Virus record (IMG/VR): IMGVR_UViG_3300027754_000034
Coordinates: 124,001-188,000 of that record
Direction: 5' to 3' (one strand)
DNA length: 64,000 nt
Positions 7,105 to 39,112 of the stretch are shown here, one piece after another. The notes below the pieces were generated by a model, which saw only the letters and a program-made list of their open reading frames with translations, made no database searches and had not been told where the DNA came from. Numbering within the stretch: the first letter of the stretch is position 1; each line of letters begins with the position of its first letter. Position numbers and translations under genes: made by a program.

Positions 7105-7129
7105 AGACGCTGCCGCGCTGCCGATTTTC
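7105..7129 (-). promoter_or_regulatory. ECF-like promoter motif, variant GAAAA-N15-CGTCT
   Basis: plus strand agacg-15nt-ttttc; same variant at 28080. Confidence 0.55.
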
Positions 7130-7289
7130 GCTGTCGCTTTAGAAATTTACATTTAAAACTGGTTTTTTCAATAACCCATCATTAATACTGACGGAGCCGA
7201 AACCTAAATACTGAGGGTAGGTCATCCCGAGAACCATTCGTAATCCGCCAAAGTAACTCTTTAATACTTTTACTTTCGGCATACTTGGG

Positions 7290-7361
7290 CTCCGGGGGTA
7301 CGGATCGAACGTACGACCAGTGCATTAACAGTGCACCGCTCTACCACTGAGCTACCCCGGA
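7290..7361 (-). tRNA. tRNA-Asn(GUU)
   Basis: TCCGGGG/CCCCGGA acceptor, GTGCA-CTGTTAA-TGCAC anticodon arm, GTTCGATCC T-loop. Confidence 0.93.
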
Positions 7362-7387
7362 ATTTAATTCACCGTACCAACAAAATG

Positions 7388-7421
7388 AAAAAGGCGACCC
7401 CGGATAACCAAGGTCGCCTTT
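7388..7421 (-). terminator. Rho-independent terminator
   Basis: aaaggcgacc...ggtcgccttt. Confidence 0.65.
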
Positions 7422-7443
7422 CCTATCAGTCAGTTCGAGTTAA

Positions 7444-7848
7444 TCAGAAATGATTATCCTCGTTGTGGTCGTGCGACGGGTACTGGAGGGTATCAGTCTC
7501 GTTCTCCCCGCGCACATAATCGACCTGTACGCCTCCACGGTCGGTGCGTGGAAAACGCTTCCGGTAACCACCGGAAGATCGACCATCGTTCATCTTGAAC
7601 TTCAGGTAAACGGGAGCGGTGGTCTTCCCTTCTTCTGGAATGTTGCTAATCGCAACCAGCTTGAATGGCCCGAGTTCGACCTCGAAAACCATTGCTTCTC
7701 CGTCGCGGACGGAGATGATACGTCCATCTACGGTCGACTCGTAAACCACTTCATTGTAACGCGGATTTGAACTCTGATTCTGATTCTGATTCTGATTCTG
7801 ATTGGAATACTGATTCTGATTCTGATTGGGATACTGATTCGGGTACAT
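7444..7848 (-). CDS. Protein with Q/N/Y-rich low-complexity N-terminus and acidic C-terminus
   Basis: MYPNQYPNQNQNQYSNQNQNQNQNQ; hexamer ctgatt repeats at about 7774-7840. Confidence 0.7.
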   Translation of the reverse strand: MYPNQYPNQNQNQYSNQNQNQNQNQSSNPRYNEVVYESTVDGRIISVRDGEAMVFEVELGPFKLVAISNIPEEGKTTAPVYLKFKMNDGRSSGGYRKRFPRTDRGGVQVDYVRGENETDTLQYPSHDHNEDNHF

Positions 7849-8066
7849 TTTTTCTTCTTTCTAGTAAGGGGATTTCCCCATAATTATGGTGTCTGATTTC
7901 TGGCCTGAATTACACTGGAGTCCAGTGTTGATATAAACTTTACCTGCTTAGGAAGGTGTTCGTTTATATATGTGTCATACTCCTATAATATCACATATAT
8001 GTGAGTATGCTTGGTATAAATCCTCCGATTTCTTACACTTGAAGGACGTATCGTCCCCGATAATTT

Positions 8067-8528
8067 TCATGCTTCGTGGACTTTATTAATTAAACGAATC
8101 TTCCGGCATGCAGAAAGAAAAGAGCTTTTTGTCGTCTTCCACCACCAAGTCTTTTCTAAATAACCTTTACTCAGCATGACTTTTACCATCTCTTGATCGA
8201 GAGTATATGAATACATCTTAGATCTGTCGAATTCGTCTGGTATGATATTTAGTCCCTGTAGGATTACTTCATCCATGAAACCGGCACCGAACTTTTTAAT
8301 ACACTTATCGATATAACCAAGATGATTAACAATCACCCTCATTACTTTTTCCCTGGATGAACTCCCACTAGTAAGTTCCGCCAGGCGATCTGCGCCGATT
8401 TTATTTAGCACTTCGTTAATCTGTTGATGAATTGGTGATAAATAATCAATGCGAGATAAGAATGAAATTGCACAGGCTTCCCCTGCGCCCTTCATAAATT
8501 TGTCATTCCAATATCCACTATTTGCCAT
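8067..8528 (-). CDS. Hypothetical protein with shared C-terminal tag
   Basis: Ends RLINKVHEA*. Confidence 0.65.
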   Translation of the reverse strand: MANSGYWNDKFMKGAGEACAISFLSRIDYLSPIHQQINEVLNKIGADRLAELTSGSSSREKVMRVIVNHLGYIDKCIKKFGAGFMDEVILQGLNIIPDEFDRSKMYSYTLDQEMVKVMLSKGYLEKTWWWKTTKSSFLSACRKIRLINKVHEA

Positions 8529-8553
8529 GTTATTTGCCTTGTAAAGTAATGAT

Positions 8554-8748
8554 ATGAAGTTTATGGTCCGTTATGACTTGAATGGAAACGTGAAAGAAAA
8601 TATACTGGATATTCCTGCTAATAAATATTGGAGTTCACAGAAAATTTTAAGAGTAGCCTCGGAGTCTCTTCTGCAATTAGTGGGTCATCACACTCTTCTA
8701 AGAGTGAAATCACTCAATGAGTCGGATCCAGTTGCAGCTGAATTATGA
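8554..8748 (+). CDS. Small hypothetical protein, probably leaderless
   Basis: G-TAAAGT 6 nt before ATG. Confidence 0.45.
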   Translation: MKFMVRYDLNGNVKENILDIPANKYWSSQKILRVASESLLQLVGHHTLLRVKSLNESDPVAAEL

Positions 8749-9069
8749 TTCCATCACATCATGAATACTGAAGTAGTCGTTAATACTTGCGGCGTCTTGG
8801 GGATTCATCTGTGCCACTGACTTTGGGAATTTCCTAGCGAATGCTTGAATTTCCTCGATCTCTATCCTATACTCATTATATAATTTTGCTAGATTTATTA
8901 CCTCCTGCACTGAAAATTTATTAAGTATTCTCTTCCTACCACCCCACTTACCAGATGCAGAAAAAAATTCTGTAAAATTACTATGATTCTTTTTCGTTCT
9001 TTTCTCTGGTAATCCAGGAGAGAATGAATCGAAATCGTAGTTATGAAATATTATCTTTCGCTGTGACAT
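8743..9069 (-). CDS. Hypothetical protein with shared C-terminal tag
   Basis: Ends SIHDVMES*. Confidence 0.65.
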   Translation of the reverse strand: MSQRKIIFHNYDFDSFSPGLPEKRTKKNHSNFTEFFSASGKWGGRKRILNKFSVQEVINLAKLYNEYRIEIEEIQAFARKFPKSVAQMNPQDAASINDYFSIHDVMES

Positions 9070-9103
9070 GGGACGTATATCATGAAGATTCTGGTTACAT
9101 ATC

Positions 9104-9150
9104 CTGAGGATTCGGGTGGGTATTCATTTTAACCCCACCCGAATCCTCAG
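9104..9150. terminator. 17-bp stem hairpin after 9152..9967
   Basis: ctgaggattcgggtggg...cccacccgaatcctcag. Confidence 0.65.
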
Positions 9151-9151
9151 A

Positions 9152-9967
9152 TCAGCCACCGCTCATCCCACCAAACCACTCTGGGGTGATTTTGTGGGAC
9201 CCCTTCGGCGTCTTGATGTAGAGTCCATTGTAAAACTCCACCAAGAGCTGAGCCAAGAACAAACGGTGCTTCTTAGGTACGATAGTCGCCTTCTTCGGGT
9301 ATCTCGTCATATGAACACCATCTTGGCCCCTCAGACGGTTCCAGAAGGACCAGCTGAAATCGGCCTTCTTGATCCACATACCGTAGGACTCCGGGTTATC
9401 GGTAAGCTCGTAAAGCTCCACCGCCGAGATTGACTCTCGGAGAGCTGATGCCAGCTTCTCATATCCGAGTGCCCCTATGGCGTCGGTGCAAGCCGCATGC
9501 ACCGGGGTGCGACGATTGAGAGAAGCCGTACGGGTTAAGCCGTTGACGAGGCCACGATTCCCCTTCGGCTTATACTTCTTGACGAGGTAGTCTACAAGCT
9601 CGGGGTACTCAGCCAAAGCCATCATGGCCTCAACATCATCCTTGGGTTCCACTTCCTCCTTGTAACCCTTCTTGGAGCATATAGGGCCGATACCCCGCTC
9701 AACAGACTCCGAATCCGTGAGGGGTTGCCCACAATGGGCACATGAGGTGCAAATTCCCTCGAGCACTAGCTGGTAGCGGCTACCACCGCTGAAGTAGCTA
9801 CTCGCGACGGGGACCAGGACGGGTCCGGTCACGAGGGTCATCTGAGTCATGGGGGTAGCCTCTTCTGGCGTGGTGGTGGTGGTGCTTTCGATCGGAATTG
9901 TGTTCATGGGTACCTCATCATTAAACATTTCGTCCATCATATCAATAATGTTCTTCATTGCGCTCAT
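9152..9967 (-). CDS. DUF6011-like Zn-ribbon protein
   Basis: CAHCGQPLTDSESVERGIGPICSKK. Confidence 0.7.
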   Translation of the reverse strand: MSAMKNIIDMMDEMFNDEVPMNTIPIESTTTTTPEEATPMTQMTLVTGPVLVPVASSYFSGGSRYQLVLEGICTSCAHCGQPLTDSESVERGIGPICSKKGYKEEVEPKDDVEAMMALAEYPELVDYLVKKYKPKGNRGLVNGLTRTASLNRRTPVHAACTDAIGALGYEKLASALRESISAVELYELTDNPESYGMWIKKADFSWSFWNRLRGQDGVHMTRYPKKATIVPKKHRLFLAQLLVEFYNGLYIKTPKGSHKITPEWFGGMSGG

Positions 9968-10019
9968 TGTATTACCTATTTGCTGTGTGTTGTGTGTGCG
10001 TGTCGCTCGCCCACCAGGA

Positions 10020-10044
10020 AGACGCAGCGCGCGCGCCGACTGTC
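10020..10044 (-). promoter_or_regulatory. ECF-like promoter motif (GACAG-N15-CGTCT) in a ~55-bp repeated cassette
   Basis: cgcccaccaggaagacgcagcgcgcgcgccgactgtcaccattctcttcagaat, near-identical at 15.57, 31.41 and 35.36 kb. Confidence 0.75.
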
Positions 10045-10147
10045 ACCATTCTCTTCAGAATGTTCCTCCATCAATTCTTGGATTTCTGCCTGGATAATAT
10101 TTAATTCTTGGACGTAATTTTTATAAAAATCGACGAGATCCTTCATA

Positions 10148-10729
10148 TCAATCCACCATAACTTCTTGAACAACCGCTAATTTTAAAATTTCTTCAATTT
10201 CTTTAGGAGAAATTCCTACTGTAAGCGCTTCGTTGATCCAATTGGGAAGAGCTACTTCAGCTTTCTTCCTCCGAATTTGATTTTTATGGATTCGAATTTT
10301 GTTTTGATCCGACAGTAATTTGTCAATTTGACATGTGGTATTTTCTAATAAACACTCGATATGTTCCTTTGACTTAGGGTTTAGACTACCAACTTTCACA
10401 CTAAGTTCAGATACAACTTCATCTCTAACATCTCGCAAAGTTCGTTTTTCTGAATTGAATCCTTGTTTATTGAGTAATTCATATGTTTTAATCCACCAAT
10501 TAGCAAGACCAGAAATTTCAATTATGAAATTTCTGGTCGATGGTGGTGGAGAAGTACGATCACTTCGAGATGAATAGTAACCCGTTATTCTTTTCCCATT
10601 TTCAACTCGCGAGATCCTAGTCCCTATTTTATCGCCGTTACCAACGATTGTCGTGGACTTGAGAGTCATGGTCGGTATAGAATCAATAACATCCTGTATT
10701 TTCTTCTGAATAATCTGATGGTGAATCAT
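10148..10729 (-). CDS. Hypothetical protein with shared C-terminal tag
   Basis: Ends SPKEIEEILKLAVVQEVMVD*. Confidence 0.7.
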   Translation of the reverse strand: MIHHQIIQKKIQDVIDSIPTMTLKSTTIVGNGDKIGTRISRVENGKRITGYYSSRSDRTSPPPSTRNFIIEISGLANWWIKTYELLNKQGFNSEKRTLRDVRDEVVSELSVKVGSLNPKSKEHIECLLENTTCQIDKLLSDQNKIRIHKNQIRRKKAEVALPNWINEALTVGISPKEIEEILKLAVVQEVMVD

Positions 10730-10997
10730 TCTTTTCTTTCTTCTTTTTCATTCTAATCGCTCTAAGCTCTAATCTAGAAAGCTCTGGCGGAAATTTATCC
10801 GTTCTTGCAATATAATACATCGTCAAGAAACTCAACCTCGCAAACCACACCTTATTACTTTCATTAATTTTGTCGTAATAGTCCAGAATCATTTGACAAT
10901 CTTCTGGACTGTGATACCATAAACCAAATCGAATTTTTTCTTGGTAGAATATTGATTCTACTAGTTTTTCAACACTATGATTCATGATGATCCGCAA
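10683..10997 (-). CDS. Hypothetical protein
   Basis: Operon overlap. Confidence 0.45.
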   Translation of the reverse strand: MRIIMNHSVEKLVESIFYQEKIRFGLWYHSPEDCQMILDYYDKINESNKVWFARLSFLTMYYIARTDKFPPELSRLELRAIRMKKKKEKNDSPSDYSEENTGCY

Positions 10998-11308
10998 ATT
11001 AAATCGTAAAAGTCTTTCTCACTGATAGTTTTCACACCCTTTTGGATGGCTTTCTGAAATTTAGAAGCCACATTTCCAGCGGCATTTGTCCAGTCCGCAT
11101 TGGTGAGAAGCAAGTCTGTGTTCCACTTCACGCTATTATGGAATACCCCGCCGGCAAGACCGATGATGTTTACGATATCCTTCCTTGGTCGGCCAAGATG
11201 ACCCGTGATACAAATGTTCTTCCCCCTAAGAGTGTCGGAGACTTCCATGATTTCCACAATAGTCGCCATGTCGGTAAATTCATTAATTCTTGCCATGATT
11301 CTCTCCAT
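10982..11308 (-). CDS. Stand-alone BRCT domain (NAD-ligase type)
   Basis: LRGKNICITGHL..PR.......GG....SV...TDLLL...SKFQKA...GVKTISEKDF. Confidence 0.8.
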   Translation of the reverse strand: MERIMARINEFTDMATIVEIMEVSDTLRGKNICITGHLGRPRKDIVNIIGLAGGVFHNSVKWNTDLLLTNADWTNAAGNVASKFQKAIQKGVKTISEKDFYDLICGSS

Positions 11309-11457
11309 GATAACGTTGATGCATTGGTACTCGTCTTGACACTCATTTGGCCGAGACGAGTGAATGAACTGATAACTGGGAAAGCTGCTAGGATAAGAAG
11401 CAGCTCATCCATATAGAAATGCGGGCCGAGGTTCCTCCGCTGTTCTCGTTACCGAAC

Positions 11458-11482
11458 AGACGCAGCGTCCTACCCGATTGTC
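11458..11482 (-). promoter_or_regulatory. ECF-like promoter motif (GACAA-N15-CGTCT)
   Basis: agacg-cagcgtcctacccga-ttgtc. Confidence 0.7.
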
Positions 11483-11513
11483 GCAGTTGATTTCGTGATA
11501 TGGAGCTAAAATT

Positions 11514-12212
11514 TCAAAGTAAACTTAAGCATTTCTTGTGAAATTTCTCTTGCTGGCCAGGGTGAAATATTTGAAAAGAATGCCAAAACTCTTCCACCCC
11601 ATTACCACTTTTAAATGTAGTACCCCTACCAAATTCCGGCATACCGTCTTTTAAATTCCAAGACGGGGCTTCTTGGGGAGCTTCATCAAATCTAGACGGG
11701 ATATAAAATTCTATTGGAACCCCGTTATCCTCTGCTAAAAAGGTATACTCCTCGGCCACATCAGATCTATAAGTTTCTACAGCACTCGGGCTTCCCATTT
11801 CCTTAAAGACTTCACGGTGGATTGCCATGCAAGAAGGAGCTACGAATAGGTGCTGATTATTCGCTATATGGTTTGACCTTTGAACGTTTCCTATTAGGAC
11901 ACCAGAATTGGCTTTATGGGCCAAGTTATTAATGGCTTCACAATTTAGAGGAACGCAATCAATATCTAAAATCACTACGACATCATGGTCACAATGATTT
12001 TGTACTTTTAAACTCTTAAAATATTCATTATCTGCACCATTCATTGCCCAAAAATGATCAATGCTGATCCCGTGCCTCGTATTGGTCTTTATTGAATAAT
12101 GAGGGAATTTAGAAGGGTTAAATTTCTCAACTACCTTTCTTTGTAATTCGACCGTATTATGGTCAATGTTATCCATATAAAAACTAATTATGCATGCATT
12201 CACTTGATCCAT
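11514..12212 (-). CDS. GT-A fold glycosyltransferase-like protein
   Basis: VVILDIDCVPL DxD motif; adjacent to a GT2. Confidence 0.65.
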   Translation of the reverse strand: MDQVNACIISFYMDNIDHNTVELQRKVVEKFNPSKFPHYSIKTNTRHGISIDHFWAMNGADNEYFKSLKVQNHCDHDVVVILDIDCVPLNCEAINNLAHKANSGVLIGNVQRSNHIANNQHLFVAPSCMAIHREVFKEMGSPSAVETYRSDVAEEYTFLAEDNGVPIEFYIPSRFDEAPQEAPSWNLKDGMPEFGRGTTFKSGNGVEEFWHSFQIFHPGQQEKFHKKCLSLL

Positions 12213-15577: not shown

Positions 15578-15602
15578 AGACGCAGCGCGCGCACCGACTG
15601 TC
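15578..15602 (-). promoter_or_regulatory. ECF-like promoter motif
   Basis: agacg-cagcgcgcgcaccga-ctgtc. Confidence 0.75.
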
Positions 15603-16874: not shown

Positions 16875-17687
16875 CTAATTCAGGTGTACGTCCGCGATTT
16901 GCAGCCTTCTCAACAAATCACTAAAATCAACACAGTGCCCTTCCATAAAGCTGCCCGCTGACAGTTCAGCCAGTAATTCTTTTTCCACAAGCTCTTTCCA
17001 ATGAGGGCTCGGATATTCGTGTTCCGAAACCGCCTTGACTAGCAGTTCGGTCCAATCGGAGAAAGTAGCAATTCCATGTTTATTTCTTTCGAAATGTTCA
17101 TCTCTTTTGAAGATCATGTGGATTCGTTCTTCAAAAGAGATAACCACTTTCGTCTTCTTGCGAACCAAATCCCCAAGATCTTTCAGGATCGCCCCGGTCA
17201 GGATCGCCCCGGTCAGATTCGCCCCGGTCAGGTCCGCCCCGCTCAGGTTTGCCCCGCGTAGATTTGTCAGCATCAGGTTCGCGTTGGTCAGGATCGCCCC
17301 GGTCAGGTTCGCGTTGACCATATACGCCCCGCTCAGGTCCGCCCCGCTCATGTCCGCATTGGTCAGGTCCGCCCCCCGCAGGGCCGCATGGTTCAGGGAC
17401 GCATGGCTCAGATTCGCCATACTCAAGTCCGCACTATTCAGGTTCGCCCCGAACAGGTTCGCCAAACTCAGGTTCGCCCCGAACAGGTTCGCCAAACTCA
17501 GGTCCGCATCAGTCAACATTGCCCCAGTCAGGTTCGCACCACATAAGTTCATCCCGCTCAGGTTCGCATCGGTCAGGTACGCATTGCGCAGGTCCGCCTT
17601 GGCCAGGTCCGCCTGCTTTTCCCCCTCCTGACGGCTGAGCCGGATGGCGTGTTGCACTAAAACTGCTTCGAGTTCTGCCTTTTTCAT
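16875..17687 (-). CDS. Pentapeptide-repeat protein with C-terminal domain and shared tag
   Basis: A(D/N)LxG repeats; ends RLQIADVHLN*. Confidence 0.9.
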   Translation of the reverse strand: MKKAELEAVLVQHAIRLSRQEGEKQADLAKADLRNAYLTDANLSGMNLCGANLTGAMLTDADLSLANLFGANLSLANLFGANLNSADLSMANLSHASLNHAALRGADLTNADMSGADLSGAYMVNANLTGAILTNANLMLTNLRGANLSGADLTGANLTGAILTGAILKDLGDLVRKKTKVVISFEERIHMIFKRDEHFERNKHGIATFSDWTELLVKAVSEHEYPSPHWKELVEKELLAELSAGSFMEGHCVDFSDLLRRLQIADVHLN

Positions 17688-19385: not shown

Positions 19386-19410
19386 AGACGCCGCGACACG
19401 CACGACTGTC
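19386..19410 (-). promoter_or_regulatory. ECF-like promoter motif
   Basis: agacg-ccgcgacacgcacga-ctgtc. Confidence 0.7.
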
Positions 19411-21350: not shown

Positions 21351-21366
21351 AGACGCCGCGACTGTC
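21351..21366 (-). promoter_or_regulatory. Deleted copy of the promoter motif (spacer 6 instead of 15)
   Basis: agacg-ccgcga-ctgtcgatatt; equals the 19386 copy minus cacgcacga. Confidence 0.65.
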
Positions 21367-21435
21367 GATATTTCCTTTGATATGTGGTCATTATAAAACT
21401 ATATATGATATATTTGCAAAATATATGAAATACGT

Positions 21436-22653: not shown

Positions 22654-22678
22654 AGACGCAGCGACAGCGACAGTTGTC
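22654..22678 (-). promoter_or_regulatory. ECF-like promoter motif
   Basis: agacg-cagcgacagcgacag-ttgtc. Confidence 0.72.
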
Positions 22679-22757: not shown

Positions 22758-23414
22758 TCAATCTTTCATAATTTCATGCATAACATAGGAGTCAAGTGCC
22801 CTTTTGAGCACTTCTGGTGAAGCATCTTTGGCCCATCTGTCCAAACACTCCACAATTTTCTCTACGACGTGATCTTCCCGGGCTTTTCGGAGGCCACTCT
22901 TGTACTCATCCCCCGATTGGTCTTCGGCAACCAGGAGACAAATCTTTTTAGAAGCTTCTTGAAATTCGGTCTCCAGGTTATAAAACTCTTGGTGAATATC
23001 TTCCCACATCATCTGCAATAGCCTATCCGGCTTGCAGAAATAAGTAGGAACCCGAGGCTTCCTCTCTCCCTCCCGAATGACGCCGAAATTATCTAGAATG
23101 ATCTTCTCCAGATCCTTCTTGTGGAAGACCATACTGAAGTTCGTTCGGCACTCGAATTGAAATTCGCCCCCAGAAATCTTGTTATGGTGGAAGCCGGAAA
23201 TGACATTTTCCTCGTTCTCTCCAAATCCAACTACAAGTATTGGGTATGACACCCCACTATAATCGACTTGGAAATCCCATTTTACGATGGACGGCGTTGC
23301 AAGTCTCCTTTTTGCAATGGCTATATAATTTTTAAAATCTTCAGTCTCCTGAATGAGACTTGAAACCTTCTTATAACTTTCACCACTCTTCAGCTTTCGC
23401 GGATTACGGGACAT
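22758..23414 (-). CDS. Hypothetical protein with shared C-terminal tag (start revised to MSRNPRK)
   Basis: AAGGAG RBS after promoter motif; ends SPEVLKRALDSYVMHEIMKD*. Confidence 0.7.
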   Translation of the reverse strand: MSRNPRKLKSGESYKKVSSLIQETEDFKNYIAIAKRRLATPSIVKWDFQVDYSGVSYPILVVGFGENEENVISGFHHNKISGGEFQFECRTNFSMVFHKKDLEKIILDNFGVIREGERKPRVPTYFCKPDRLLQMMWEDIHQEFYNLETEFQEASKKICLLVAEDQSGDEYKSGLRKAREDHVVEKIVECLDRWAKDASPEVLKRALDSYVMHEIMKD

Positions 23415-23435
23415 CGTGTTCTCCTTCACCCGGCG

Positions 23436-23460
23436 AGACGCAGCGACGCGGGCAATTGTC
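23436..23460 (-). promoter_or_regulatory. ECF-like promoter motif
   Basis: agacg-cagcgacgcgggcaa-ttgtc. Confidence 0.72.
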
Positions 23461-23490
23461 AGTATTTCGTTTCGATGCATTTACTACTAT

Positions 23491-24896: not shown

Positions 24897-25493
24897 TTGT
24901 TTTTTAACGTGAAACCTCGTGAATTATCAAATGCCCTTCGTCGTATAGCTGCAGCCATAGAGGGTTCTAAAAACCCATCTCGTAAACTTGTAACTGCGGA
25001 TTTAAAAGGGGTTATTTCACGTTTATCTTCTGATAAAATATCAAAAGATAAACTTGAAGAAATTATCAAGCAGCACGCCCTATGGGTCAAAAAAGACCCC
25101 GCAGGGGTGGAGGCGGACCTTAGCGGGATGGACCTTAGCGGGATGGACCTGGAGGGGGCTAACCTGAAGGAGGCTAACCTGAAGGAGGCTAAACTGAAGG
25201 GGGCTAACCTGAAGAGGGCTAACCTGCTTCATGCGGACCTGACCGGGGCGGACCTGACCGGGGCGGACCTGACCAAGGCGGACCTAAGCGGGGCGGACCT
25301 GGACCGGGCGTTCCTGACCGATGCGAATCTGACCGGGGCGCGGCTGGTCAATGCTAACCTGAAGGGGGCTAACCTGGACGGGACGAACGTGCACGATGCG
25401 GACTTTCGTGGGGCGAACCTGAATAATATATCCTTGGACAAAACGAAGGGCAAACCCAAAGAGGAAGGGATGCGAACCTTCGGACGGATCTAA
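24897..25493 (+). CDS. Pentapeptide-repeat protein with N-terminal 'LRRIAA' module
   Basis: ANLKE/ADLTG repeats; out-of-frame repeats continue to about 25540. Confidence 0.85.
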   Translation: MFFNVKPRELSNALRRIAAAIEGSKNPSRKLVTADLKGVISRLSSDKISKDKLEEIIKQHALWVKKDPAGVEADLSGMDLSGMDLEGANLKEANLKEAKLKGANLKRANLLHADLTGADLTGADLTKADLSGADLDRAFLTDANLTGARLVNANLKGANLDGTNVHDADFRGANLNNISLDKTKGKPKEEGMRTFGRI

Positions 25494-26226: not shown

Positions 26227-26251
26227 GGACGCAGCGGCAGCGGCAGCTGTC
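26227..26251 (-). promoter_or_regulatory. ECF-like promoter motif (GACAG-N15-CGTCC)
   Basis: ggacg-cagcggcagcggcag-ctgtc. Confidence 0.7.
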
Positions 26252-28079: not shown

Positions 28080-28104
28080 AGACGCAGCGACCGGGCCGAT
28101 TTTC
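28080..28104 (-). promoter_or_regulatory. ECF-like promoter motif variant upstream of the tRNA cluster
   Basis: agacg-cagcgaccgggccga-ttttc. Confidence 0.6.
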
Positions 28105-29294: not shown

Positions 29295-29319
29295 AGACGC
29301 GGAAGAATCGCAGACTGTC
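29295..29319 (-). promoter_or_regulatory. ECF-like promoter motif
   Basis: agacg-cggaagaatcgcaga-ctgtc. Confidence 0.65.
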
Positions 29320-29498
29320 ACCCTTTATATTTCACCATCATCATCTTCGATTACATAATCGTGATGGGTTAGTTTTATTTTATTCTTGGTGCGTTCTAAA
29401 TCTAAAAGATATAAAGTATATTCTAATGCAGACACTTCTGTTTTTCTCTCTTCTAAGTATTTTCTAACCCTTCCCTCATCCCAGTATTTCATTTCCGG

Positions 29499-29571
29499 CA
29501 CCCCGTACGGGACTTGAACCCATTTACATGATTTGAAAGGACGCTGGCCTGACCGGGTAGTCTAACGGGGT
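29499..29571 (-). pseudogene. Degenerate tRNA-Glu(UUC)
   Basis: Acceptor ACCCCGT/ACGGGGT and T arm intact; anticodon stem GCGTC/ATCAT mostly unpaired. Confidence 0.7.
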
Positions 29572-31425: not shown

Positions 31426-31450
31426 AGACGCAGCGCGCGCGCCGACTGTC
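31426..31450 (-). promoter_or_regulatory. ECF-like promoter motif in repeated cassette
   Basis: Matches the 10020 copy over more than 50 bp. Confidence 0.75.
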
Positions 31451-31846: not shown

Positions 31847-31871
31847 AGACGCAGCGGCAGCGGCGACTGTC
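31847..31871 (-). promoter_or_regulatory. ECF-like promoter motif
   Basis: agacg-cagcggcagcggcga-ctgtc. Confidence 0.7.
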
Positions 31872-32999: not shown

Positions 33000-33260
33000 T
33001 CAGAATTCCGAATCTTTGAATGAGTGACCCTTGACGCCGACCATGATCGCCCTGGTCAGCTGCGCCCCCTCCCATTCAGCCCCGGTCAGATCCGCCCTGG
33101 TCAGGTCCGCCCTGGTCAGGATCGTGTTGCTCAGGTTCGCGAAGGTCAGGTTTGTGTCAACCAGACACGCCCCGCTCAGGTTCGCGAAGGTCAGGTTTGC
33201 AAAGTGCAGGTTTGCTCCGCTCAGGTTCGCGTTGAGCATCCACGCATCGCTCAGGTTCGC
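33000..33260 (-). pseudogene. 5'-truncated pentapeptide-repeat gene fused to a promoter cassette
   Basis: ANLSD/ANLTF repeats start immediately after the motif copy, with no N-terminal domain. Confidence 0.6.
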
Positions 33261-33267
33261 AACAGGA

Positions 33268-33292
33268 AGACGCAGCGAGTGCGCCGACTGTC
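33268..33292 (-). promoter_or_regulatory. ECF-like promoter motif (duplicate of 34017 copy)
   Basis: cgcaacaggaagacgcagcgagtgcgccgactgtcgcgaatttttcgaacccaaa. Confidence 0.72.
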
Positions 33293-33979: not shown

Positions 33980-34016
33980 GGTTCTACCCTAGCTGCTATG
34001 GCCCGCCGCAACAGGA

Positions 34017-34041
34017 AGACGCAGCGAATGCGCCGACTGTC
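34017..34041 (-). promoter_or_regulatory. ECF-like promoter motif
   Basis: agacg-cagcgaatgcgccga-ctgtc. Confidence 0.72.
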
Positions 34042-34139
34042 GCGAATTTTTCGAACCCAAATATTTATGATATATGATACGAAGTCATGCCATCCTTCGC
34101 GAACCGTGCGGCAGTGCCTTATGGATGGGTGAAAATATT

Positions 34140-34493: not shown

Positions 34494-34494
34494 A

Positions 34495-34917
34495 TCAATA
34501 ATGTTTCACAAGTCGCGCATTCACTATTCCGAGTTCCAGTACTCCGAAGTTTGTGTCAAATCGGCAAGCGATAATGTCGCCGTGATATTCTATCATTTGT
34601 CCTTCACGAACCCTCAGCGTCTGCTCGTCATTCGAAAGACGCAAGTAAATATCCGGGACGGATACTATTGCCTCGTCCATGTCTGCAGTGATTTTCCCTG
34701 AACGGCTCACATTTACCACGTAGCTGTTCAGATGAGCTTCGTGCCCTGTGAGGGCTTCACAAGCTTTTTCGGCTTGGAATCCGGTAAGCTTACGCATTCG
34801 GAATTCTGAACGAATTTGGAAATATTCCGATGTAGTAAGTACCGAACTCGCCTTGGCTAACGGATCGATGAAAAGGATTGAAAATGCTAGAACGGCTGCT
34901 GTTGCGATCTTCTTCAT
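34495..34917 (-). CDS. Secreted OB-fold-like protein
   Basis: Signal peptide MKKIATAAVLAFSILF...AKA; L..GQ.I...G. Confidence 0.5.
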   Translation of the reverse strand: MKKIATAAVLAFSILFIDPLAKASSVLTTSEYFQIRSEFRMRKLTGFQAEKACEALTGHEAHLNSYVVNVSRSGKITADMDEAIVSVPDIYLRLSNDEQTLRVREGQMIEYHGDIIACRFDTNFGVLELGIVNARLVKHY

Positions 34918-34944
34918 AATTCCTCCAGAAGATTAGAATCTTCG

Positions 34945-35018
34945 CGCCCTCGGGTGGACTCGAACCACCGACCTGTCGCTTAGAAGGCGAATGCTCTATC
35001 CAATTGAGCTACGAGGGC
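34945..35018 (-). tRNA. tRNA-Arg(UCU)
   Basis: GCCCTCG/CGAGGGC acceptor, TCGC-CTTCTAA-GCGA. Confidence 0.92.
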
Positions 35019-35107
35019 AATTTTTGGTTTTCATTTACCGCGAACGTAAAACCAATAAAACCGTACTCCGTCCAATTAGGACGAATACCATGTTCACGAG
35101 CGGGATT

Positions 35108-35326
35108 TTAAAATCTCATCCAGTTCTCGGGTTCACCTGAAGAAATGGCTTTTTTGGCCTCTTCCTCGGTTTCGAAGTAGATAGACTCCCGAGAGTAGGG
35201 TCCACAGTAACAAGCTGTTCCGAGGTACCACCCCGCGCCGGAACGGAGCGGTTGGAGGACCAGCTTAATATTACAACTGCCGCAGGTATCAGCGGCTCCA
35301 GACAGTATAGTTTCGCCTGCAATCAT
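35108..35326 (-). CDS. Small Cys-containing phage protein (start revised to MIAGET)
   Basis: SGAGWYLGTAC.CGPYSRES.YF.T.EEA. Confidence 0.65.
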   Translation of the reverse strand: MIAGETILSGAADTCGSCNIKLVLQPLRSGAGWYLGTACYCGPYSRESIYFETEEEAKKAISSGEPENWMRF

Positions 35327-35362
35327 TTGTGTTCTTCCTGTGTGTGTGTGCGTCTCTCGGGT

Positions 35363-35387
35363 AGACGCTGCGCGCGCGCCGACTGTC
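35363..35387 (-). promoter_or_regulatory. ECF-like promoter motif in repeated cassette
   Basis: agacg-ctgcgcgcgcgccga-ctgtcaccattctcttcagaat. Confidence 0.72.
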
Positions 35388-35429
35388 ACCATTCTCTTCA
35401 GAATATTTCTCCATCAGGACATTTTTGGG

Positions 35430-35993
35430 TCATTTATTCAAAAGGTGTCGATTCAGCAAATGCTGAAAAGGGCGGATTTCAAACATGGCTTCCTGAACCA
35501 TTCTCACCCAGGTAGAAGAATGGAAAAAATTGGGTCCAGGTTTTTCCAGGAAATTCCAGAACCCCAGGAAATCGGTATTATGTCCGATTTTCCGATTCAT
35601 CCGGTCGGTCGGATCTACCCAGGGGTTTGTCACCATCCATGATGGTCTGCCTCTTCGAATTTGAAAAAGACAGGGTTCCCAGTCCAATATATGACACATA
35701 CTGGACGAAAATAATATATTATTTCGGTTTAAATCTCCATGCACTAGACCGAAATAATAAGCTAAATCCAAAGATTTGGCTAGGCTGATTTTTTGCCTAG
35801 AGGACAACTCACCATAGTTTATTTTTTCGCCGGGCGAGCGAGAAGATTCCCTTACTACATTATCCTTCAATACAGTAAATTTTACTTGAACAGGAATCCT
35901 GACCGAAATCTTTTCAATCACGGCGATTCTATCTAGAACTTGGTCCCAAGGGCAAAGAAGGTCTTCTCTTTTATAAGATTTTTGGAAGATCAA
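35430..35993 (-). CDS. Protein-kinase-like (APH/PKL) protein
   Basis: VHGDLNRNNILF...ILDWE. Confidence 0.7.
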   Translation of the reverse strand: MIFQKSYKREDLLCPWDQVLDRIAVIEKISVRIPVQVKFTVLKDNVVRESSRSPGEKINYGELSSRQKISLAKSLDLAYYFGLVHGDLNRNNILFSSSMCHILDWEPCLFQIRRGRPSWMVTNPWVDPTDRMNRKIGHNTDFLGFWNFLEKPGPNFFHSSTWVRMVQEAMFEIRPFQHLLNRHLLNK

Positions 35994-36199
35994 CCGAGCT
36001 TCCTTAGTTTATCATTCAATTCTTCAATTTTATCTCGCAAAAATTTGCGCATCGCCTGATTGGCTTTCGACTCTTCCTGGAACGTTAAGTCGTTCTTTAC
36101 GTATCCGTGTCCCACGATGTGATAACCATCGGGGTCACTACGGATTGCATCCGAACGCTTCACTTCTTCTTTTGACGAGTCGATAAACCAAAGCTTCAT
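35990..36199 (-). CDS. Hypothetical protein
   Basis: ATGA-coupled operon. Confidence 0.5.
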   Translation of the reverse strand: MKLWFIDSSKEEVKRSDAIRSDPDGYHIVGHGYVKNDLTFQEESKANQAMRKFLRDKIEELNDKLRKLG

Positions 36200-36624
36200 T
36201 TTATATGAACTTTACAAGTCCGTTTATTATGACCGAGTTCGTAACAAATCGAACATCGATTGAAGCCGATTTGGGTTCTCGGCGGACTTGAAATTCGCAT
36301 CCTAGAATTCTTCTTTTTAAAGAATTCCGGGGGTTTGGGTCTGCAAGTTTCCATTATGTCGATTTCAAGACCCAAAACGAATAAAACTTTTCGAAATACA
36401 AGTTCGCTGATTGATTCTTGTCGAAGCATTCCACGAATTCTTGCAGAAGTCACACCGACTCTGCGAGCCAAATCGCTCTTGGTCCAATTTAGATCTTTTA
36501 GCCTGAAATCAATGACCTCTGAAAAAGTAAAATTTTGATTCAAATTACTACCATTTGGGAATACGTTTCCAAATGTAATGATAGCCTTTCTCACCCGGTA
36601 AATTACAACGGCAAAGACTCCCAC
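36196..36624 (-). CDS. XRE-type HTH regulator with C-terminal zinc knuckle
   Basis: WTKSDLARRVGVTSARI; CSICYELGHNKRTC. Confidence 0.75.
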   Translation of the reverse strand: MGVFAVVIYRVRKAIITFGNVFPNGSNLNQNFTFSEVIDFRLKDLNWTKSDLARRVGVTSARIRGMLRQESISELVFRKVLFVLGLEIDIMETCRPKPPEFFKKKNSRMRISSPPRTQIGFNRCSICYELGHNKRTCKVHIK

Positions 36625-36690
36625 TGTATTTGATACAATATATCAGCATGCCGTGTCAAATATGTGCTATATATTTGACACGGCATTCGG

Positions 36691-36775
36691 CGGAAGAAGA
36701 GGGATTCGAACCCACGGTGGGTTTCCCCACGGCTGATTAGTAATCAGCTGCCTTAAACCACTCGGCCATTCTTCC
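36691..36775 (-). tRNA. tRNA-Ser with rare ACU anticodon
   Basis: GGAAGAA acceptor, GCTGA-TTACTAA-TCAGC, long variable arm GTGGG-GAAA-CCCAC, G73. Confidence 0.9.
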
Positions 36776-36780
36776 TAGTA

Positions 36781-37221
36781 TCAGCCGTAATTTCGGACGA
36801 TGTGGAAGTTCCACCATTTGAGAGGTCGGAACCTTCGCAAACGGTCGGAAAGATCCATGATCGTCCGAAGCGGGACATTATGAATGTTCCGATCGGAGCA
36901 CAGATCCACATCAGCGTCGATTCGGATGATGCGGGAATCACATCCAAACGCGTTGGCGAGCGCCATGTAAGGCGCGCATTCAAGCTCAGTGGTGTTTGTA
37001 TTATCAATGATCACCTCTGGGGCACCAGAGGTTACAGCTTCTACTGCTCTCTTGAAGCAGTTCCCATGAGCCCATGATAGCTGCGTTTTATCGAATTTGT
37101 AAACCCCATTCACTTCAAAGAAGTGTTCGGAGCTACAAATTACGGCGTTCTGAAAGTGGGCTTTCGTGTAATGGGTTTTACCTGAGCCAGGAAGACCCTG
37201 CATAATGTATAATTTAGTCAT
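36781..37221 (-). CDS. P-loop kinase, polynucleotide-kinase/AAA_33-like
   Basis: MQGLPGSGKT, IIDNTN, RNIHNVP. Confidence 0.85.
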   Translation of the reverse strand: MTKLYIMQGLPGSGKTHYTKAHFQNAVICSSEHFFEVNGVYKFDKTQLSWAHGNCFKRAVEAVTSGAPEVIIDNTNTTELECAPYMALANAFGCDSRIIRIDADVDLCSDRNIHNVPLRTIMDLSDRLRRFRPLKWWNFHIVRNYG

Positions 37222-37275
37222 AACCTATTTTACAGACCAAACTGGTAGTAGAATTTTCTCTTTCTAGTATCCATC

Positions 37276-38273
37276 ATTAAGTGAGGTATATGGAATATTG
37301 AGAAAATATTCCATATACCTCACTTAATTTTTCACAAATTCTAGGCCTCAGTTGATTTCTATGACCTTCCCCTCTTCCAAGAGTACTATATACTCTTTCT
37401 GGCCGAATCCGCAGAAAGTAACGGTATTCCTTTCACTATCATGATGCCCTATATAGAAGAAAGGTATATTATACCTCACTCTAAGATAGTCTAATGAATC
37501 TTGATTCATGGGATCCTATTTCTTAGAATAGGCTTAATCCTCACAATTTCTCTTTCGAGAATATATGGCATGAATGCTAGAAATTCATGCCATATATGTT
37601 TCACTTGCCGATGAATGCGAGTCCAGTTAGAATGATGCCTCTTTCAGTACCAATTAATCACTTGATCAGGTTTTATTTTTCCGGGTGTGGTGGGTTGGGG
37701 ATCGAGCAAGAGATATGGCATAAATTTTAGAAACCTATGCCATATCTGTGCGTGTGTGTTTGTTGTGTGGTGCTATGGGGATCGGTCTCGCTACCCATCT
37801 CCATTCAAGTTTGGCTCGCTTTGATCTCAAATCTCGATCCTAACCCAGGGGTCTTCCGCCTGGGTTAGGATCGAGCAAAATATATCCTAGGGGTTCAAGC
37901 GAATCCTGCCACCCATCCGGCGACTTCTCGGCCTTGGGCAGACATGACGATCCCATTGATTCGAATGAGTGCCAATGGGTTCCGATGTAAAAGTTCTCCC
38001 CGTCCACCGTCAGAGCAAGATGGAGTGCTTCTCCTCGAGCCAGTGTATCCCCCCTAGGAATGCTTCGAATTTCTTTTATAGTTCCTCCAAATGTATGGCA
38101 TAAATGTTAGAAATCTATGCCATACATGATGTGTGTTTGTAGGGTGGTGCTTTGTTATTTAAATATCAAGTAACCGGATATTTAAATAACAGAGCACCAC
38201 CACCCTTTCGGATGGTGGTGCTCAGGTTCGCCCGGTTCAGATGGGCCGGTCTTGCGACCGGCCCATCTGAACC
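37276..38273. other. Hairpin-dense, apparently non-coding ~1-kb region
   Basis: 24-bp stem at 37276-37328; three 37-nt related inverted repeats (37561, 37711, 38091); further stems at 37833, 38152, 38192, 38234. Confidence 0.75.
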
Positions 38274-38279
38274 TCCTCC

Positions 38280-38891
38280 TCAGATCTCGGGGGAGATCAC
38301 CCGGGCCTGGTCTCGAAGCGCGGGATCAGCTGCCATCAGCTGGTCTCGAACCACGACCAAGGTGGCCTTGCTGTAACGTGTGCCCACCAATGTTGCGTAA
38401 CCAAGCATCCCATGCTTGGTGGTTGCAAACCGGATCCCATCGGCCTTGAGCTGCCCGAGTGGCTTGCCATCCTTGTCCGTTGGGACCTTTAGATCTCCCT
38501 CCCAGGCCTTCTCGAAGGCCTGGGCCGGTTCCTCACCAGCGGTGGTGAGTGCCTCGAAGGAGGCCATGATTTGGGAGGCGATGCCAGTGCTCGCGAGAGC
38601 GTGGCTCGACATGAACCCCCTCCGGTTCTTACTTGTGGTCTCTTTCGAGGCCACCTCGTCTTGTGTCTGGAGGAGGAAGGTCAAGAGGAAGACGCAGCGC
38701 GCGGCGGCATCGTCGTTCGAGACTCTGTGCCGCAATTCTTCGACCCCGATGAAGGGCCACTGGCGGAAGCCAGGGGAAGGGACCTTGATCTGGACGAGGT
38801 TGTTGATGAGCATGGAAATGGTCTTGATGTTGTTGTTCACGGTCGGCTCCAATGCAGGTGAAGGTGAAATGTCCGAAAGCGGCACCTGCAA
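38280..38891 (-). CDS. First gene after the tandem promoters; unknown function (likely GTG start at 38840)
   Basis: GC-rich coding bias, GGAG RBS before GTG, hairpin after stop. Confidence 0.65.
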   Translation of the reverse strand: MQVPLSDISPSPALEPTVNNNIKTISMLINNLVQIKVPSPGFRQWPFIGVEELRHRVSNDDAAARCVFLLTFLLQTQDEVASKETTSKNRRGFMSSHALASTGIASQIMASFEALTTAGEEPAQAFEKAWEGDLKVPTDKDGKPLGQLKADGIRFATTKHGMLGYATLVGTRYSKATLVVVRDQLMAADPALRDQARVISPEI

Positions 38892-38904
38892 GCCGCTCTC
38901 GCAT

Positions 38905-39112
38905 CAGGAGGACGCAGCGCCCGGTGCAGCTGTCGCTGCGACCGGATCACCGCTCCCTCACACAAGGAGGACGCAGCGCCCGGTGCAGCTGTCGCTGCGA
39001 CCGGATCACCGCTCCCTCACACAAGGAGGACGCAGCGCCCGGGGCAGCTGTCGCTGCGACCGGATCACCCCGTCTCCCTCACAAGGAGGACGCAGCGCCC
39101 GGGGCAGCTGTC
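38905..39112 (-). repeat. Four tandem 59-60 bp repeats, each carrying the promoter motif
   Basis: aggaggacgcagcgcccgg[t/g]gcagctgtc with ggacg at 38910, 38969, 39028, 39088. Confidence 0.9.

What the first reader, a model, noticed from the sequence alone, without database searches (positions are those of the whole stretch)
7105..39112. 22-copy ECF-sigma-like promoter regulon confined to one arm
Seen: minus-strand GACA[G/A]-N15-CGTC[T/C], usually with CGCTG just before CGTC, at 7105, 10020, 11458, 15578, 16821, 19386, 21351, 22654, 23436, 26227, 28080, 29295, 31426, 31847, 33268, 34017, 35363, 38690, 38910, 38969, 39028 and 39088. Three copies have variant upstream boxes (7105, 28080, 38690). 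21 of 22 have exactly 15 nt between the boxes. All face the same way, nearly all are intergenic and upstream of a gene start, and I saw none after 39.2 kb. Established: a -10 CGTC element with a fixed spacer is typical of ECF sigma promoters (e.g. ECF41 TGTCACA-N16-CGTC). Inference: early transcription uses an ECF-type sigma rather than sigma70, which is unusual for phages.
Basis: partly seen in the sequence, partly recalled or inferred. Interest (0 to 1): 0.8.

Follow-up and report, generated by a model that had tools for sequence, protein, structure and literature searches.

The report
Phage promoter set with ECF-like boxes
About twenty copies of a two-box DNA signal sit in front of the genes of one 32-kb block of an uncultured 257-kb freshwater phage. 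They look like promoters read by an alternative (ECF-like) sigma factor, probably the phage's own, a known strategy seen here in an unstudied phage group.

Summary
GACAR-N15-CGTCY occurs 18 times, all on the minus strand (0.27 expected). Three copies have variant boxes and one has a spacer deletion. The conserved block is about 35 nt: GyGACAGyyG, a G/C-rich spacer, CGCTGCGTCT, then tcCyGGTG.

Fifteen of 22 sites are fully intergenic, and most lie 18-150 nt upstream of a start codon or tRNA. The window is part of a 257,205-bp jumbo-phage contig. All 14 strict matches in that contig fall at window 10-39 kb.

A close relative keeps the boxes at orthologous genes while the spacer drifts. Four distant relatives carry their own two-box motifs before the same gene block. 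Each has a CGTA/CGTC core and an upstream box starting exactly 20 nt before it, and orientation follows gene direction.

ORF 59553-60851 is a divergent sigma-70-family protein. It is a core gene of this PurZ-encoding jumbo-phage clade.

Best reading: a phage-specific promoter class with ECF-like geometry, most likely served by this phage sigma. That would make the block middle rather than early genes. No transcript data exist, so start sites, timing and the sigma assignment remain inferred. This is a new member of a known kind (compare phiEco32 gp36, SPO1 gp28).

The parts
39088..39112 (-). Promoter-like site, copy 1 of a 4-copy tandem array (59-60 bp period) at the head of the block
   Evidence: Exact match; PWM 50.2; tandem repeat 38906-39112
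39028..39052 (-). Promoter-like site, tandem copy 2
38969..38993 (-). Promoter-like site, tandem copy 3
38910..38934 (-). Promoter-like site, tandem copy 4
38690..38714 (-). Variant site (GACGA box), 79 nt upstream of ATG 38612, which has a GGAGG Shine-Dalgarno sequence
   Evidence: PWM 26.6; downstream starts; gene calls are unstable here
35363..35387 (-). Promoter-like site upstream of a small ORF and tRNA-Arg
34017..34041 (-). Promoter-like site (paralogue of 33268)
33268..33292 (-). Promoter-like site upstream of a pentapeptide-repeat ORF
31847..31871 (-). Promoter-like site, 18 nt before ATG 31829
31426..31450 (-). Promoter-like site (cassette family with 10020, 15578 and 35363)
29295..29319 (-). 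Promoter-like site with a weak spacer and extended -10
   Evidence: Exact match; PWM 19.4
28080..28104 (-). Variant site (GAAAA box) upstream of tRNA-Leu and tRNA-Gly
   Evidence: PWM 34.7; tRNAs; context
26227..26251 (-). Promoter-like site, 61 nt before ATG 26166
23436..23460 (-). Promoter-like site, 23 nt before ATG 23414 (GGAG Shine-Dalgarno); lies inside the longer JGI call
22654..22678 (-). Promoter-like site upstream of the AAA-ATPase gene
21351..21375 (-). Degenerate copy of 19386 with a 9-nt spacer deletion (GACAG-N6-CGTC); probably not functional as such
19386..19410 (-). Promoter-like site upstream of the DUF2201/VWA gene; the orthologous site is kept in relative L048
16821..16845 (-). 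Promoter-like site upstream of the DNA ligase gene
15578..15602 (-). Promoter-like site upstream of the DUF6915 gene
11458..11482 (-). Promoter-like site upstream of the BRCT gene; the orthologous site is kept in L048
10020..10044 (-). Promoter-like site upstream of the DUF6011 gene; the orthologous site (GACGA variant) is in L048
7105..7129 (-). Weak variant site (GAAAA box, poor extended -10), 131 nt before ATG 6974
   Evidence: PWM 12.5, near the shuffle maximum of 10.4
59553..60851 (+). Divergent sigma-70-family protein (432 aa). Sigma4, and probably part of sigma2, lie in the C-terminal ~190 aa; there is a ~240-aa family-specific N-terminal extension. Candidate reader of the motif.
   Evidence: Pfam Sigma70_r4 E 0.0018; 182 homologues, some with PF04545/PF08281; profile hit to FliA sigma4 E 2.8e-4; top Foldseek hits are sigma factors; TIGR02937 on residues 297-430
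60880..63183 (+). 767-aa protein of unknown function, immediately downstream of the sigma-like gene in 12 of 16 relatives' loci; possible partner
   Evidence: No Pfam, PHROG or NCBIfam hit; conserved synteny at 23-45% identity
39113..39800 (.). Repeat-rich non-coding region directly upstream of the tandem promoters: a 47-bp repeat holding the palindrome CCCCCTATATATATAGGGGG, and repeated TGAAATGGGACC-type boxes. It marks the boundary of the block.

Best explanation
The motif copies are promoters of one phage-specific class. Each has a -35-like box (GyGACAG), a G/C-rich spacer of fixed length but free sequence, an extended -10-like element (CGCTG-CGTCT), and a conserved GGTG where transcription would start 6-9 nt further on.

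Together they drive the minus-strand block at window ~7-39 kb. That block holds the DNA ligase, nucleotide-metabolism genes, an AAA ATPase, a DUF2201/VWA protein, tRNAs and many small ORFs, in units of about two genes. Four tandem copies sit at the head of the block.

The geometry is that of ECF (group 4) sigma promoters. It implies a two-domain sigma bound to a bacterial-type core RNA polymerase. The most likely sigma is the phage's own conserved sigma-like protein (59553-60851), acting on host core polymerase. In that case the block is a middle class, switched on after the sigma is made, unless the sigma travels in the virion.

Shown: the motif, its statistics, its placement, its conservation, and the sigma-family nature of the ORF. 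Inferred: promoter activity, the start site, which sigma reads the sites, and the timing.
For: - Statistics and strand: 18 exact sites against 0.27 expected, all co-oriented with the genes. A PWM scan adds 4 weaker sites and finds nothing elsewhere in the window.
- Placement: 15 of 22 sites are fully intergenic (P = 2e-6). Most lie 18-150 nt upstream of a start codon or a tRNA.
- Confinement: all 14 strict matches in the 257-kb contig lie in the block.
- Footprint: in relative L048 (DUF2201 protein 89% identical) the three orthologous sites keep the boxes at 27/30 positions, with the -10 box at 15/15. The spacer keeps 27/45 (Fisher P = 0.008) and the upstream flank 49/90.
- Clade pattern: four distant relatives have their own two-box motifs before the same block genes. 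L052 has 12 sites, L051 has 6, L050 has 5 and L053 has 4, each far above shuffle expectation. All have a CGTA/CGTC core (in L053 partly AGTA) and an upstream box starting 20 nt before it. In L052 the sites occur on both strands and follow gene direction.
- Geometry: it equals ECF41 TGTCACA-n16-CGTC (PMC3426412).
- Sigma: the 59553 product is sigma-like. It is a core gene in a syntenic module (PurZ, p255, p89, sigma, p767, p109) present in the 16 jumbo relatives' loci examined. Its N-terminal part is well conserved and its sigma4 part is variable, in line with a constant -10 and variable -35 boxes.
Against: - No transcript 5' ends are available. No RNA run was listed.
- The -35 box lacks the AAC typical of ECF promoters.
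- All sigma hits are weak and below curated cut-offs. The N-terminal 150 aa alone gave no sigma2 fold match.
- There is no motif upstream of the sigma gene.
- About 190 kb of the genome was not inspected, so another sigma or a phage RNA polymerase cannot be excluded.
- Two intermediate relatives (L044, L046) carry almost pure G/C repeats with no evident CGT box at the same places. The element can therefore change beyond what one conserved -10 reader would predict.
- Several copies are recent duplicates, so the count of 22 overstates independent support.
Confidence: 0.6

Rival explanations
1. The sites are true early promoters read by a host alternative (ECF-type) sigma bound to host RNA polymerase. 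No phage protein is needed.
For: The geometry is ECF-like. Four tandem copies head the block next to a repeat-rich non-coding region, as in strong early promoter clusters. The block contains typical early or middle functions. There is no motif in front of the phage sigma gene.
Against: The CGT core and the 20-nt geometry are kept in relatives whose fetched loci range from 43% to 64% G+C, and the wider clade runs 35-65% G+C, which implies very different hosts. The clade does share a phage sigma gene. From general knowledge, host ECF sigmas are usually scarce and held by anti-sigma factors. The host is unknown, so its promoters could not be scanned.
Confidence: 0.2
2. The sites are promoters for a phage-encoded RNA polymerase, single-subunit or multisubunit, encoded outside the window. 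No sigma factor is involved.
For: The sequences are phage-specific and change between relatives, as among T7-group phages. About 190 kb of the genome was not examined. Some jumbo phages encode their own polymerases (PMC7598289, listed).
Against: The motif is bipartite with a free spacer rather than one continuous conserved stretch. No polymerase-like ORF was found among the large ORFs of the window. In a survey of 224 jumbo phages, no sigma factor was found in the group that encodes its own polymerases, and the phages with sigma factors lack an RNA polymerase (PMC7824862). There is no hairpin of the N4 type.
Confidence: 0.08
3. The sites are not promoters. They are binding sites for a regulator or recombinase, an RNA-level leader element, or a G/C-rich repeat cassette that spreads between genes.
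For: Several copies share long flanks and look like duplicated cassettes. Relatives L044 and L046 have near-identical 50-60-bp G/C-only repeats at the same places, and some L044 copies are followed by T-runs. One copy carries a slippage deletion.
Against: The motif is asymmetric and always co-oriented with the downstream gene, including on both strands in L052. The boxes are conserved while the spacer drifts. ssDNA folds are no more stable than shuffles for seven of the eight elements folded (z from -1.3 to +1.4) and only marginally for a tandem copy (z = -2.1), and no common hairpin appears. Rfam finds no family other than tRNAs. Terminator-like sites are not enriched.
Confidence: 0.1

Closest known systems
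ECF (group 4) sigma promoters, e.g. ECF41 TGTCACA-n16-CGTC (PMC3426412)
   Same: Both are bipartite, with a CGTC -10 core and an (A)CA-N16-CGTC distance. The spacer length is fixed and its sequence is free. Relatives of this phage even show GGAAAC/GTAAAT-type -35 boxes with CGTA.
   Different: The window's -35 box is GACAG, without AAC. The AAC-to-CGT distance in relatives is about 14 nt, against a usual 16-17 (the usual figure is from my own knowledge). There is an extra conserved CGCTG before CGTC and GGTG after it. The sites sit in a phage, in about 20 copies, rather than in a small bacterial stress regulon. There is no copy in front of the sigma gene.
phiEco32 gp36 system: a phage two-domain sigma directs host RNA polymerase to middle and late promoters (PMC12276001)
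   Same: A phage-encoded sigma2/sigma4-type factor and a phage-specific promoter class would switch host core polymerase to one block of phage genes.
   Different: gp36 is about 214 aa and its promoters are centred on AATGTA near -11. The protein here is 432 aa with a ~240-aa N-terminal extension, and its promoters are G/C-rich with a CGTC core. gp36 needs the helper gp79; here a conserved 767-aa neighbour of unknown role exists. Nothing here has been tested experimentally.
Bacillus phage SPO1 gp28 and gp33/34 sigma cascade (mentioned in PMC13401047; details from my own knowledge)
   Same: Temporal classes are defined by phage sigmas that recognise phage-specific -35 and -10 boxes.
   Different: The consensus sequences and sigma families differ. 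SPO1 early genes use host sigma A. No cascade has been shown here.
T4-type mobile early-promoter cassettes (PeSL; from my own knowledge, not checked here)
   Same: Repeated promoter-bearing cassettes with shared flanks precede small ORFs in a plastic early region. Here four copies share about 90 nt, including a CA-rich leader and an AGGTAA Shine-Dalgarno sequence.
   Different: PeSLs carry sigma-70 early promoters plus a stem-loop. No stem-loop is conserved here, and the boxes are not of sigma-70 type.

Membership tests
ECF-sigma-dependent promoter | Two conserved boxes separated by a spacer of fixed length and free sequence | tested here: met
   21 of 22 sites have a 15-nt spacer. The spacer is variable within the phage and between orthologues.
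ECF-sigma-dependent promoter | -10 element with a CGT core | tested here: met
   CGTC is invariant in the 18 exact sites. CGTA or CGTC is present in relatives L050, L051 and L052, and (C/A)GTAT in L053. The element is absent or unclear in L044 and L046.
ECF-sigma-dependent promoter | -35 element containing AAC | tested here: not met
   The window box is GACAG. Relatives L051 and L052 have GGAAAC, GTAAAC or GTAAAT.
ECF-sigma-dependent promoter | Transcription start a few nt downstream of the -10 element | not testable with these tools
   No RNA run was listed for this DNA.
ECF-sigma-dependent promoter | Autoregulation: the same promoter upstream of the sigma gene | tested here: not met
   There is no PWM hit anywhere after 39.2 kb, including upstream of 59553.
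Sigma-70 family, ECF-like two-domain sigma (the 59553-60851 product) | Sigma region 4 helix-turn-helix | tested here: met
   Pfam PF04545 on residues 384-429, E 0.0018, below cut-off. The family profile hits FliA sigma4 at E 2.8e-4. Homologues carry PF04545 or PF08281. Foldseek sigma4 hits reach target-normalised TM 0.6-0.88.
Sigma-70 family, ECF-like two-domain sigma (the 59553-60851 product) | Sigma region 2 (core binding and -10 recognition) | tested here: inconclusive
   TIGR02937 aligns residues 297-430 to model positions 50-163 at E 2.4e-4, below cut-off. The full-length model's best PDB hit is ECF sigma L over 203 columns at E 0.02. The N-terminal 150 aa alone gave no sigma2 match.
Sigma-70 family, ECF-like two-domain sigma (the 59553-60851 product) | Binds core RNA polymerase and directs initiation | not testable with these tools
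   This needs biochemistry.
T7-type single-subunit polymerase promoters | One continuous conserved stretch of about 20 nt, plus a phage single-subunit polymerase gene | tested here: inconclusive
   The spacer is not conserved. No polymerase-like ORF is among the ten largest ORFs of the window. About 190 kb of the genome was not read.
N4-type hairpin promoters, intrinsic terminators, structured RNA | A conserved stem-loop | tested here: not met
   Eight elements folded as ssDNA give z-scores from -2.1 to +1.4 with no common hairpin. There is no Rfam hit. Terminator-like sites are not enriched.

The most novel reading that the evidence does not exclude
The whole clade encodes PurZ next to the sigma gene, so its DNA may carry 2-aminoadenine (Z) in place of adenine. 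The conserved sigma-like protein and its G/C-rich, CGT-core promoters could then be an adaptation for transcribing Z-DNA. On such DNA, A/T-rich sigma-70 -10 elements would no longer melt easily or fit the adenine pocket. The rapidly changing -35 boxes would give each phage a private, orthogonal promoter code.
Probability: 0.1. Interest if true: 0.8.

Novelty: new member of a known kind. Interest (0 to 1): 0.5.

Why it matters
If confirmed, this defines the transcription programme of an unstudied clade of PurZ-encoding jumbo phages. The clade would have a core, unusually built sigma factor and a promoter class whose -10 core is constant while the -35 box is re-invented from phage to phage.

That offers a natural series of sigma and promoter pairs for studying how specificity evolves, and for building orthogonal expression parts. 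It also gives a concrete handle on how a genome that may contain 2-aminoadenine is transcribed. For annotation, the motif marks transcription units and corrects several gene starts in the block.

Tried and rejected
- Near-identity DNA search of both arms against 50,697 phage records gave no match. The best protein-level neighbour of the DnaE-like polymerase is a 484-kb uncultured phage at 34% identity.
- Public RNA runs: none was listed, so start sites could not be mapped.
- Strict motif scan of IMG/VR: other contigs give only single, apparently chance hits.
- The 20-kb neighbourhoods of the sigma gene in 17 jumbo relatives contain no motif. They were still useful for synteny.
- Hairpin, cruciform or RNA-structure reading: rejected.
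- Sigma-70-type promoter and terminator scans: no enrichment in either arm.
- A single-protein search for relatives of the DUF2201 gene in IMG/VR found only the phage itself. Relatives came from the protein database instead.
- Folding the N-terminal 150 aa of the sigma-like protein alone gave no meaningful fold match.
- The 240-aa ORF 22758-23480 is not related to the sigma4-only protein found in relative L051.
- The idea that the -10 box avoids adenine because of Z-substitution is weakened, since relatives use CGTAT and CGTACC.
- The 767-aa neighbour: the protein atlas gave only sub-threshold 'terminal protein' leads.
- Cluster look-up gave no sample accessions to link sigma orthologues to the short early-block contigs.

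Full report
**Observation.** Dinucleotide-preserving shuffles give a mean of 0.27 and a maximum of 2. It runs G[C/T]GACAG[T/C][C/T]G, then a G/C-rich stretch of free sequence, then CGC(T)G-CGTC[T/C], then tcC[t/c]gGTG. There is also a weak A-rich patch 8-12 nt upstream.

- 28080 scores 34.7.
- 38690 scores 26.6.
- 7105 scores 12.5, close to the shuffle maximum of 10.4.
- 21351 is a copy of 19386 that lost 9 nt of spacer, leaving GACAG only 6 nt from CGTC.

The scan finds nothing comparable on the plus strand or beyond 39.2 kb. The copies are not all independent. Four share about 90 nt including a CA-rich leader, two form a pair, and four make a 59-bp tandem array at 38906-39112.

**Genomic setting.** The window is bases 124,001-188,000 of a 257,205-bp contig from a freshwater metagenome. 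The contig is JGI 3300027754 Ga0209596_1000003, also held as IMGVR_UViG_3300027754_000034. It has no close relative among deposited phage genomes.

A stricter pattern, GACARYYG-N7-CGCTGCGTCY, has 14 matches in the whole contig, and all lie at window 10-39 kb. The signal is therefore confined to one ~32-kb block of a jumbo-phage genome.

That block is transcribed leftward. JGI minus-strand and 10 plus-strand genes in the stretch examined. They include:
- a DNA ligase;
- a DUF2201/VWA metallopeptidase-like protein;
- an AAA ATPase;
- a dCMP deaminase;
- a PP-loop protein;
- a glycosyltransferase and a BRCT protein;
- pentapeptide-repeat proteins;
- six tRNAs and many small ORFs.

The other arm holds a DnaE-like polymerase, collagen-like tail fibres, ThyX, a Mom-like protein and PurZ.

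**Placement.** Fifteen of the 22 sites are fully intergenic in a block that is 80% annotated (binomial P = 2e-6). Most of the rest overlap doubtful calls or over-extended 5' ends. Most sites lie 18-150 nt upstream of a start codon, in many cases with a visible Shine-Dalgarno sequence such as AGGTAATA or GGAG. Site 28080 precedes tRNA-Leu and tRNA-Gly, and site 35363 precedes a small ORF and tRNA-Arg. Four tandem copies head the block, directly after a repeat-rich non-coding region.

**Rival structural readings.** Folded as single strands, seven of the eight elements tested are no more stable than shuffled sequence, one tandem copy is marginally more stable (z = -2.1), and they share no hairpin. 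Rfam finds only the tRNAs. Terminator-like and sigma-70-like sites are not enriched. The motif is asymmetric and strictly co-oriented with the genes. This argues against a palindromic operator, an N4-type hairpin promoter, a terminator or a structured leader.

**Comparative evidence.** The DUF2201 protein of the block has hundreds of homologues on phage-like contigs.

In the closest relative (L048, 89% protein identity) three orthologous intergenic regions keep the motif. Summed over the three pairs:

| Segment | Identical positions |
|---|---|
| Two 5-nt boxes | 27/30 (-10 box 15/15) |
| 15-nt spacer | 27/45 (Fisher P = 0.008 against the boxes) |
| 30 nt upstream | 49/90 |
| 20 nt downstream | 39/60 |

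This is the footprint expected of a two-box protein-binding signal.

Four distant relatives, with DUF2201 identity of 44-60%, carry their own repeated two-box signals in front of the same block genes:

| Locus | Contig size | Motif | Sites |
|---|---|---|---|
| L052 | 436 kb | G[T/C]AAATTC-N12-CGTA[T/C] | 12 (shuffle mean 0.03) |
| L051 | 242 kb | GGAAACC or GTAGGTT-N13-CGTACC | 6 |
| L050 | 382 kb | GGAG-N16-CGTACC | 5 (0.06 expected) |
| L053 | 377 kb | GGAGCT-N14-(C/A)GTAT | 4 |

In each of these the downstream core is CGTA or CGTC (partly AGTA in L053), usually preceded by G. The upstream box begins exactly 20 nt before it, as in the window. In L052 the sites occur on both strands and always point at the adjacent gene. 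In these relatives the core is followed after about 8-10 nt by GGAGGTGA and the start codon, which implies very short leaders.

Two relatives of intermediate distance behave differently. L044 (80% identity) and L046 (70%) have, at the same places, near-identical 50-60-bp elements made almost only of G and C. Both share an upstream TTCAAAG-like patch, and neither has an evident CGT box. This remains unexplained and tempers the model.

**Which polymerase.** The geometry ACA-N16-CGTC equals that of ECF41 promoters, TGTCACA-n16-CGTC. The authors of that study call CGTC typical of ECF -10 regions (PMC3426412). The relatives' GGAAAC/GTAAAT ... CGTA boxes look like textbook ECF promoters, though with a spacer about 2 nt shorter than I recall as usual.

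The window encodes a candidate reader, ORF 59553-60851 (432 aa). The evidence that it is a sigma factor is as follows:
- It has a weak Pfam Sigma70_r4 match at its C-terminus.
- Its 182 or more homologues, of 370-570 aa, sit on contigs of up to 436 kb. Some carry PF04545 or PF08281, and JGI names several 'sigma24 family'.
- A profile of the family hits FliA sigma4.
- NCBIfam's sigma70-ECF model aligns residues 297-430.
- An AlphaFold model (pLDDT 84) finds sigma factors among nearly all of its top matches, both in the PDB (best is M. tuberculosis ECF sigma L) and among viral models.

All these scores are below curated thresholds. The first ~240 aa form a family-specific extension with a Cys-rich insert. 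The first 150 aa of it, folded alone, have no recognisable fold match.

The gene is part of a syntenic module: PurZ, a 255-aa protein, an 89-aa protein, the sigma-like gene, the 767-aa protein and a 109-aa protein. PurZ, p255 and p89 are found in 14 of the 16 jumbo relatives' loci examined, and the 767-aa protein in 12. The G+C content of these relatives ranges from 35% to 65%.

Three points make the phage sigma the most economical reader. The -10 core and box geometry are conserved across phages that must infect very different hosts. The same phages share this sigma gene. And the sigma's N-terminal part is conserved while its sigma4 part is variable.

By analogy with phiEco32, the block would then be a middle class rather than 'early' unless the sigma is injected. 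In phiEco32, host sigma-70 serves the early genes and the two-domain phage sigma gp36 serves the middle and late ones (PMC12276001). A survey of jumbo phages likewise found that the phages encoding sigma factors lack their own polymerase (PMC7824862).

**What is not shown.**
- There are no transcript data. No RNA run was listed.
- The host is unknown.
- About 190 kb of the genome was not read, so further sigma factors or a phage polymerase cannot be excluded.
- The -35 box lacks AAC.
- The sigma gene is not preceded by the motif.

I therefore put 0.6 on 'promoters of ECF-like architecture read by a sigma-type factor, probably the phage's own'. The rivals get 0.2 for a host ECF-type sigma (true early genes), 0.08 for a phage polymerase, and 0.1 for 'not promoters'.

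**Novelty.** Phage-specific promoter classes served by phage sigmas are well known (SPO1, T4, phiEco32). This is a new member of that kind in an uncultured clade. Three features stand out:
- an unusually large sigma;
- a constant CGT core with -35 boxes that are replaced between relatives;
- co-occurrence with PurZ throughout the clade.

The idea that the system is an adaptation to 2-aminoadenine DNA is not excluded. It has no direct support, however, and the simplest version (a -10 box free of adenine) fails in the relatives.

Noticed in passing
window 56493-63514; loci L028-L043: A syntenic module (PurZ, 255-aa protein, 89-aa protein, sigma-like gene, 767-aa protein, 109-aa protein) recurs in the jumbo relatives' loci. 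PurZ, p255 and p89 are in 14 of 16 loci, with PurZ at 55-68% identity. The best NCBIfam hit is succino-amino-deoxyadenylate synthase PurZ, though below its cut-off. The clade may therefore have 2-aminoadenine (Z) genomes.
   Followed up: partly
window 1933-4230: An adenylosuccinate-lyase (PurB-like) gene lies in a 62.7% G+C island within a genome of 35-50% G+C. It looks like a recent acquisition, and it could act after PurZ in the 2-aminoadenine pathway.
   Followed up: no
L044:1-10698, L045, L046:1-17267, L047: Relatives at 70-80% DUF2201 identity carry near-identical 50-60-bp elements made almost only of G and C in front of the same block genes (at least 5 and at least 12 copies, one orientation). 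Both share an upstream TTCAAAG-like patch. Some L044 copies end in T-runs. How these relate to the CGT-core motifs is unexplained.
   Followed up: partly
window 39113-39800: A non-coding region holds a 47-bp repeat (2.5 copies) that includes the palindrome CCCCCTATATATATAGGGGG, and several TGAAATGGGACC-like boxes. It lies between the two arms and may be an origin or control region.
   Followed up: no
window 29497-29571 and 36689-36775: ARAGORN calls a tRNA with anticodon TCA (it would read UGA; labelled SeC; Rfam tRNA score 30.5, just above threshold) and a tRNA-Ser with the unusual anticodon ACT. These could be a suppressor or recoding tRNA.
   Followed up: no
window 21351-21375: The spacer-deletion copy places GGAAAT at the -20 position relative to CGTC. 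That resembles the -35 boxes of relatives L051 and L052. This may be coincidence.
   Followed up: no
window 40000-59000: Many genes of the other arm have no Shine-Dalgarno sequence and A/T-rich upstream regions. At 54957-54985 a near-consensus TTGACT-17-TACAAT with a TG extension ends 6 nt before the ATG of the Mom-like gene, which suggests a leaderless transcript. Translation signals therefore differ between the two arms.
   Followed up: no
window 16875-17687, 24897-25493, 33000-33239, 53281-54174: There are several pentapeptide-repeat proteins, visible as 15-nt tandem arrays. A relative (L046) also has them.
   Followed up: no
L051:13592-14314: A relative encodes a 240-aa protein with only a sigma region 4 inside its early block (TIGR02937 at 44 bits, above the cut-off). 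No homologue was found in the window apart from the C-terminus of the 432-aa protein.
   Followed up: partly
window 54992-56515: A 507-aa protein combines a Mom-like DNA-modification domain with an N-terminal part that matches HNH and homing-endonuclease PHROG families, plus a weak Vsr-like match.
   Followed up: no
window 38200-39150: Gene calls disagree between assemblies in this ~60% G+C stretch. One has a plus-strand 242-aa ORF running across the tandem promoters, and the other has short ORFs. ATG 38612, with a GGAGG Shine-Dalgarno sequence downstream of site 38690, looks like the best start. A strong terminator-like hairpin follows at 38192-38223.
   Followed up: partly
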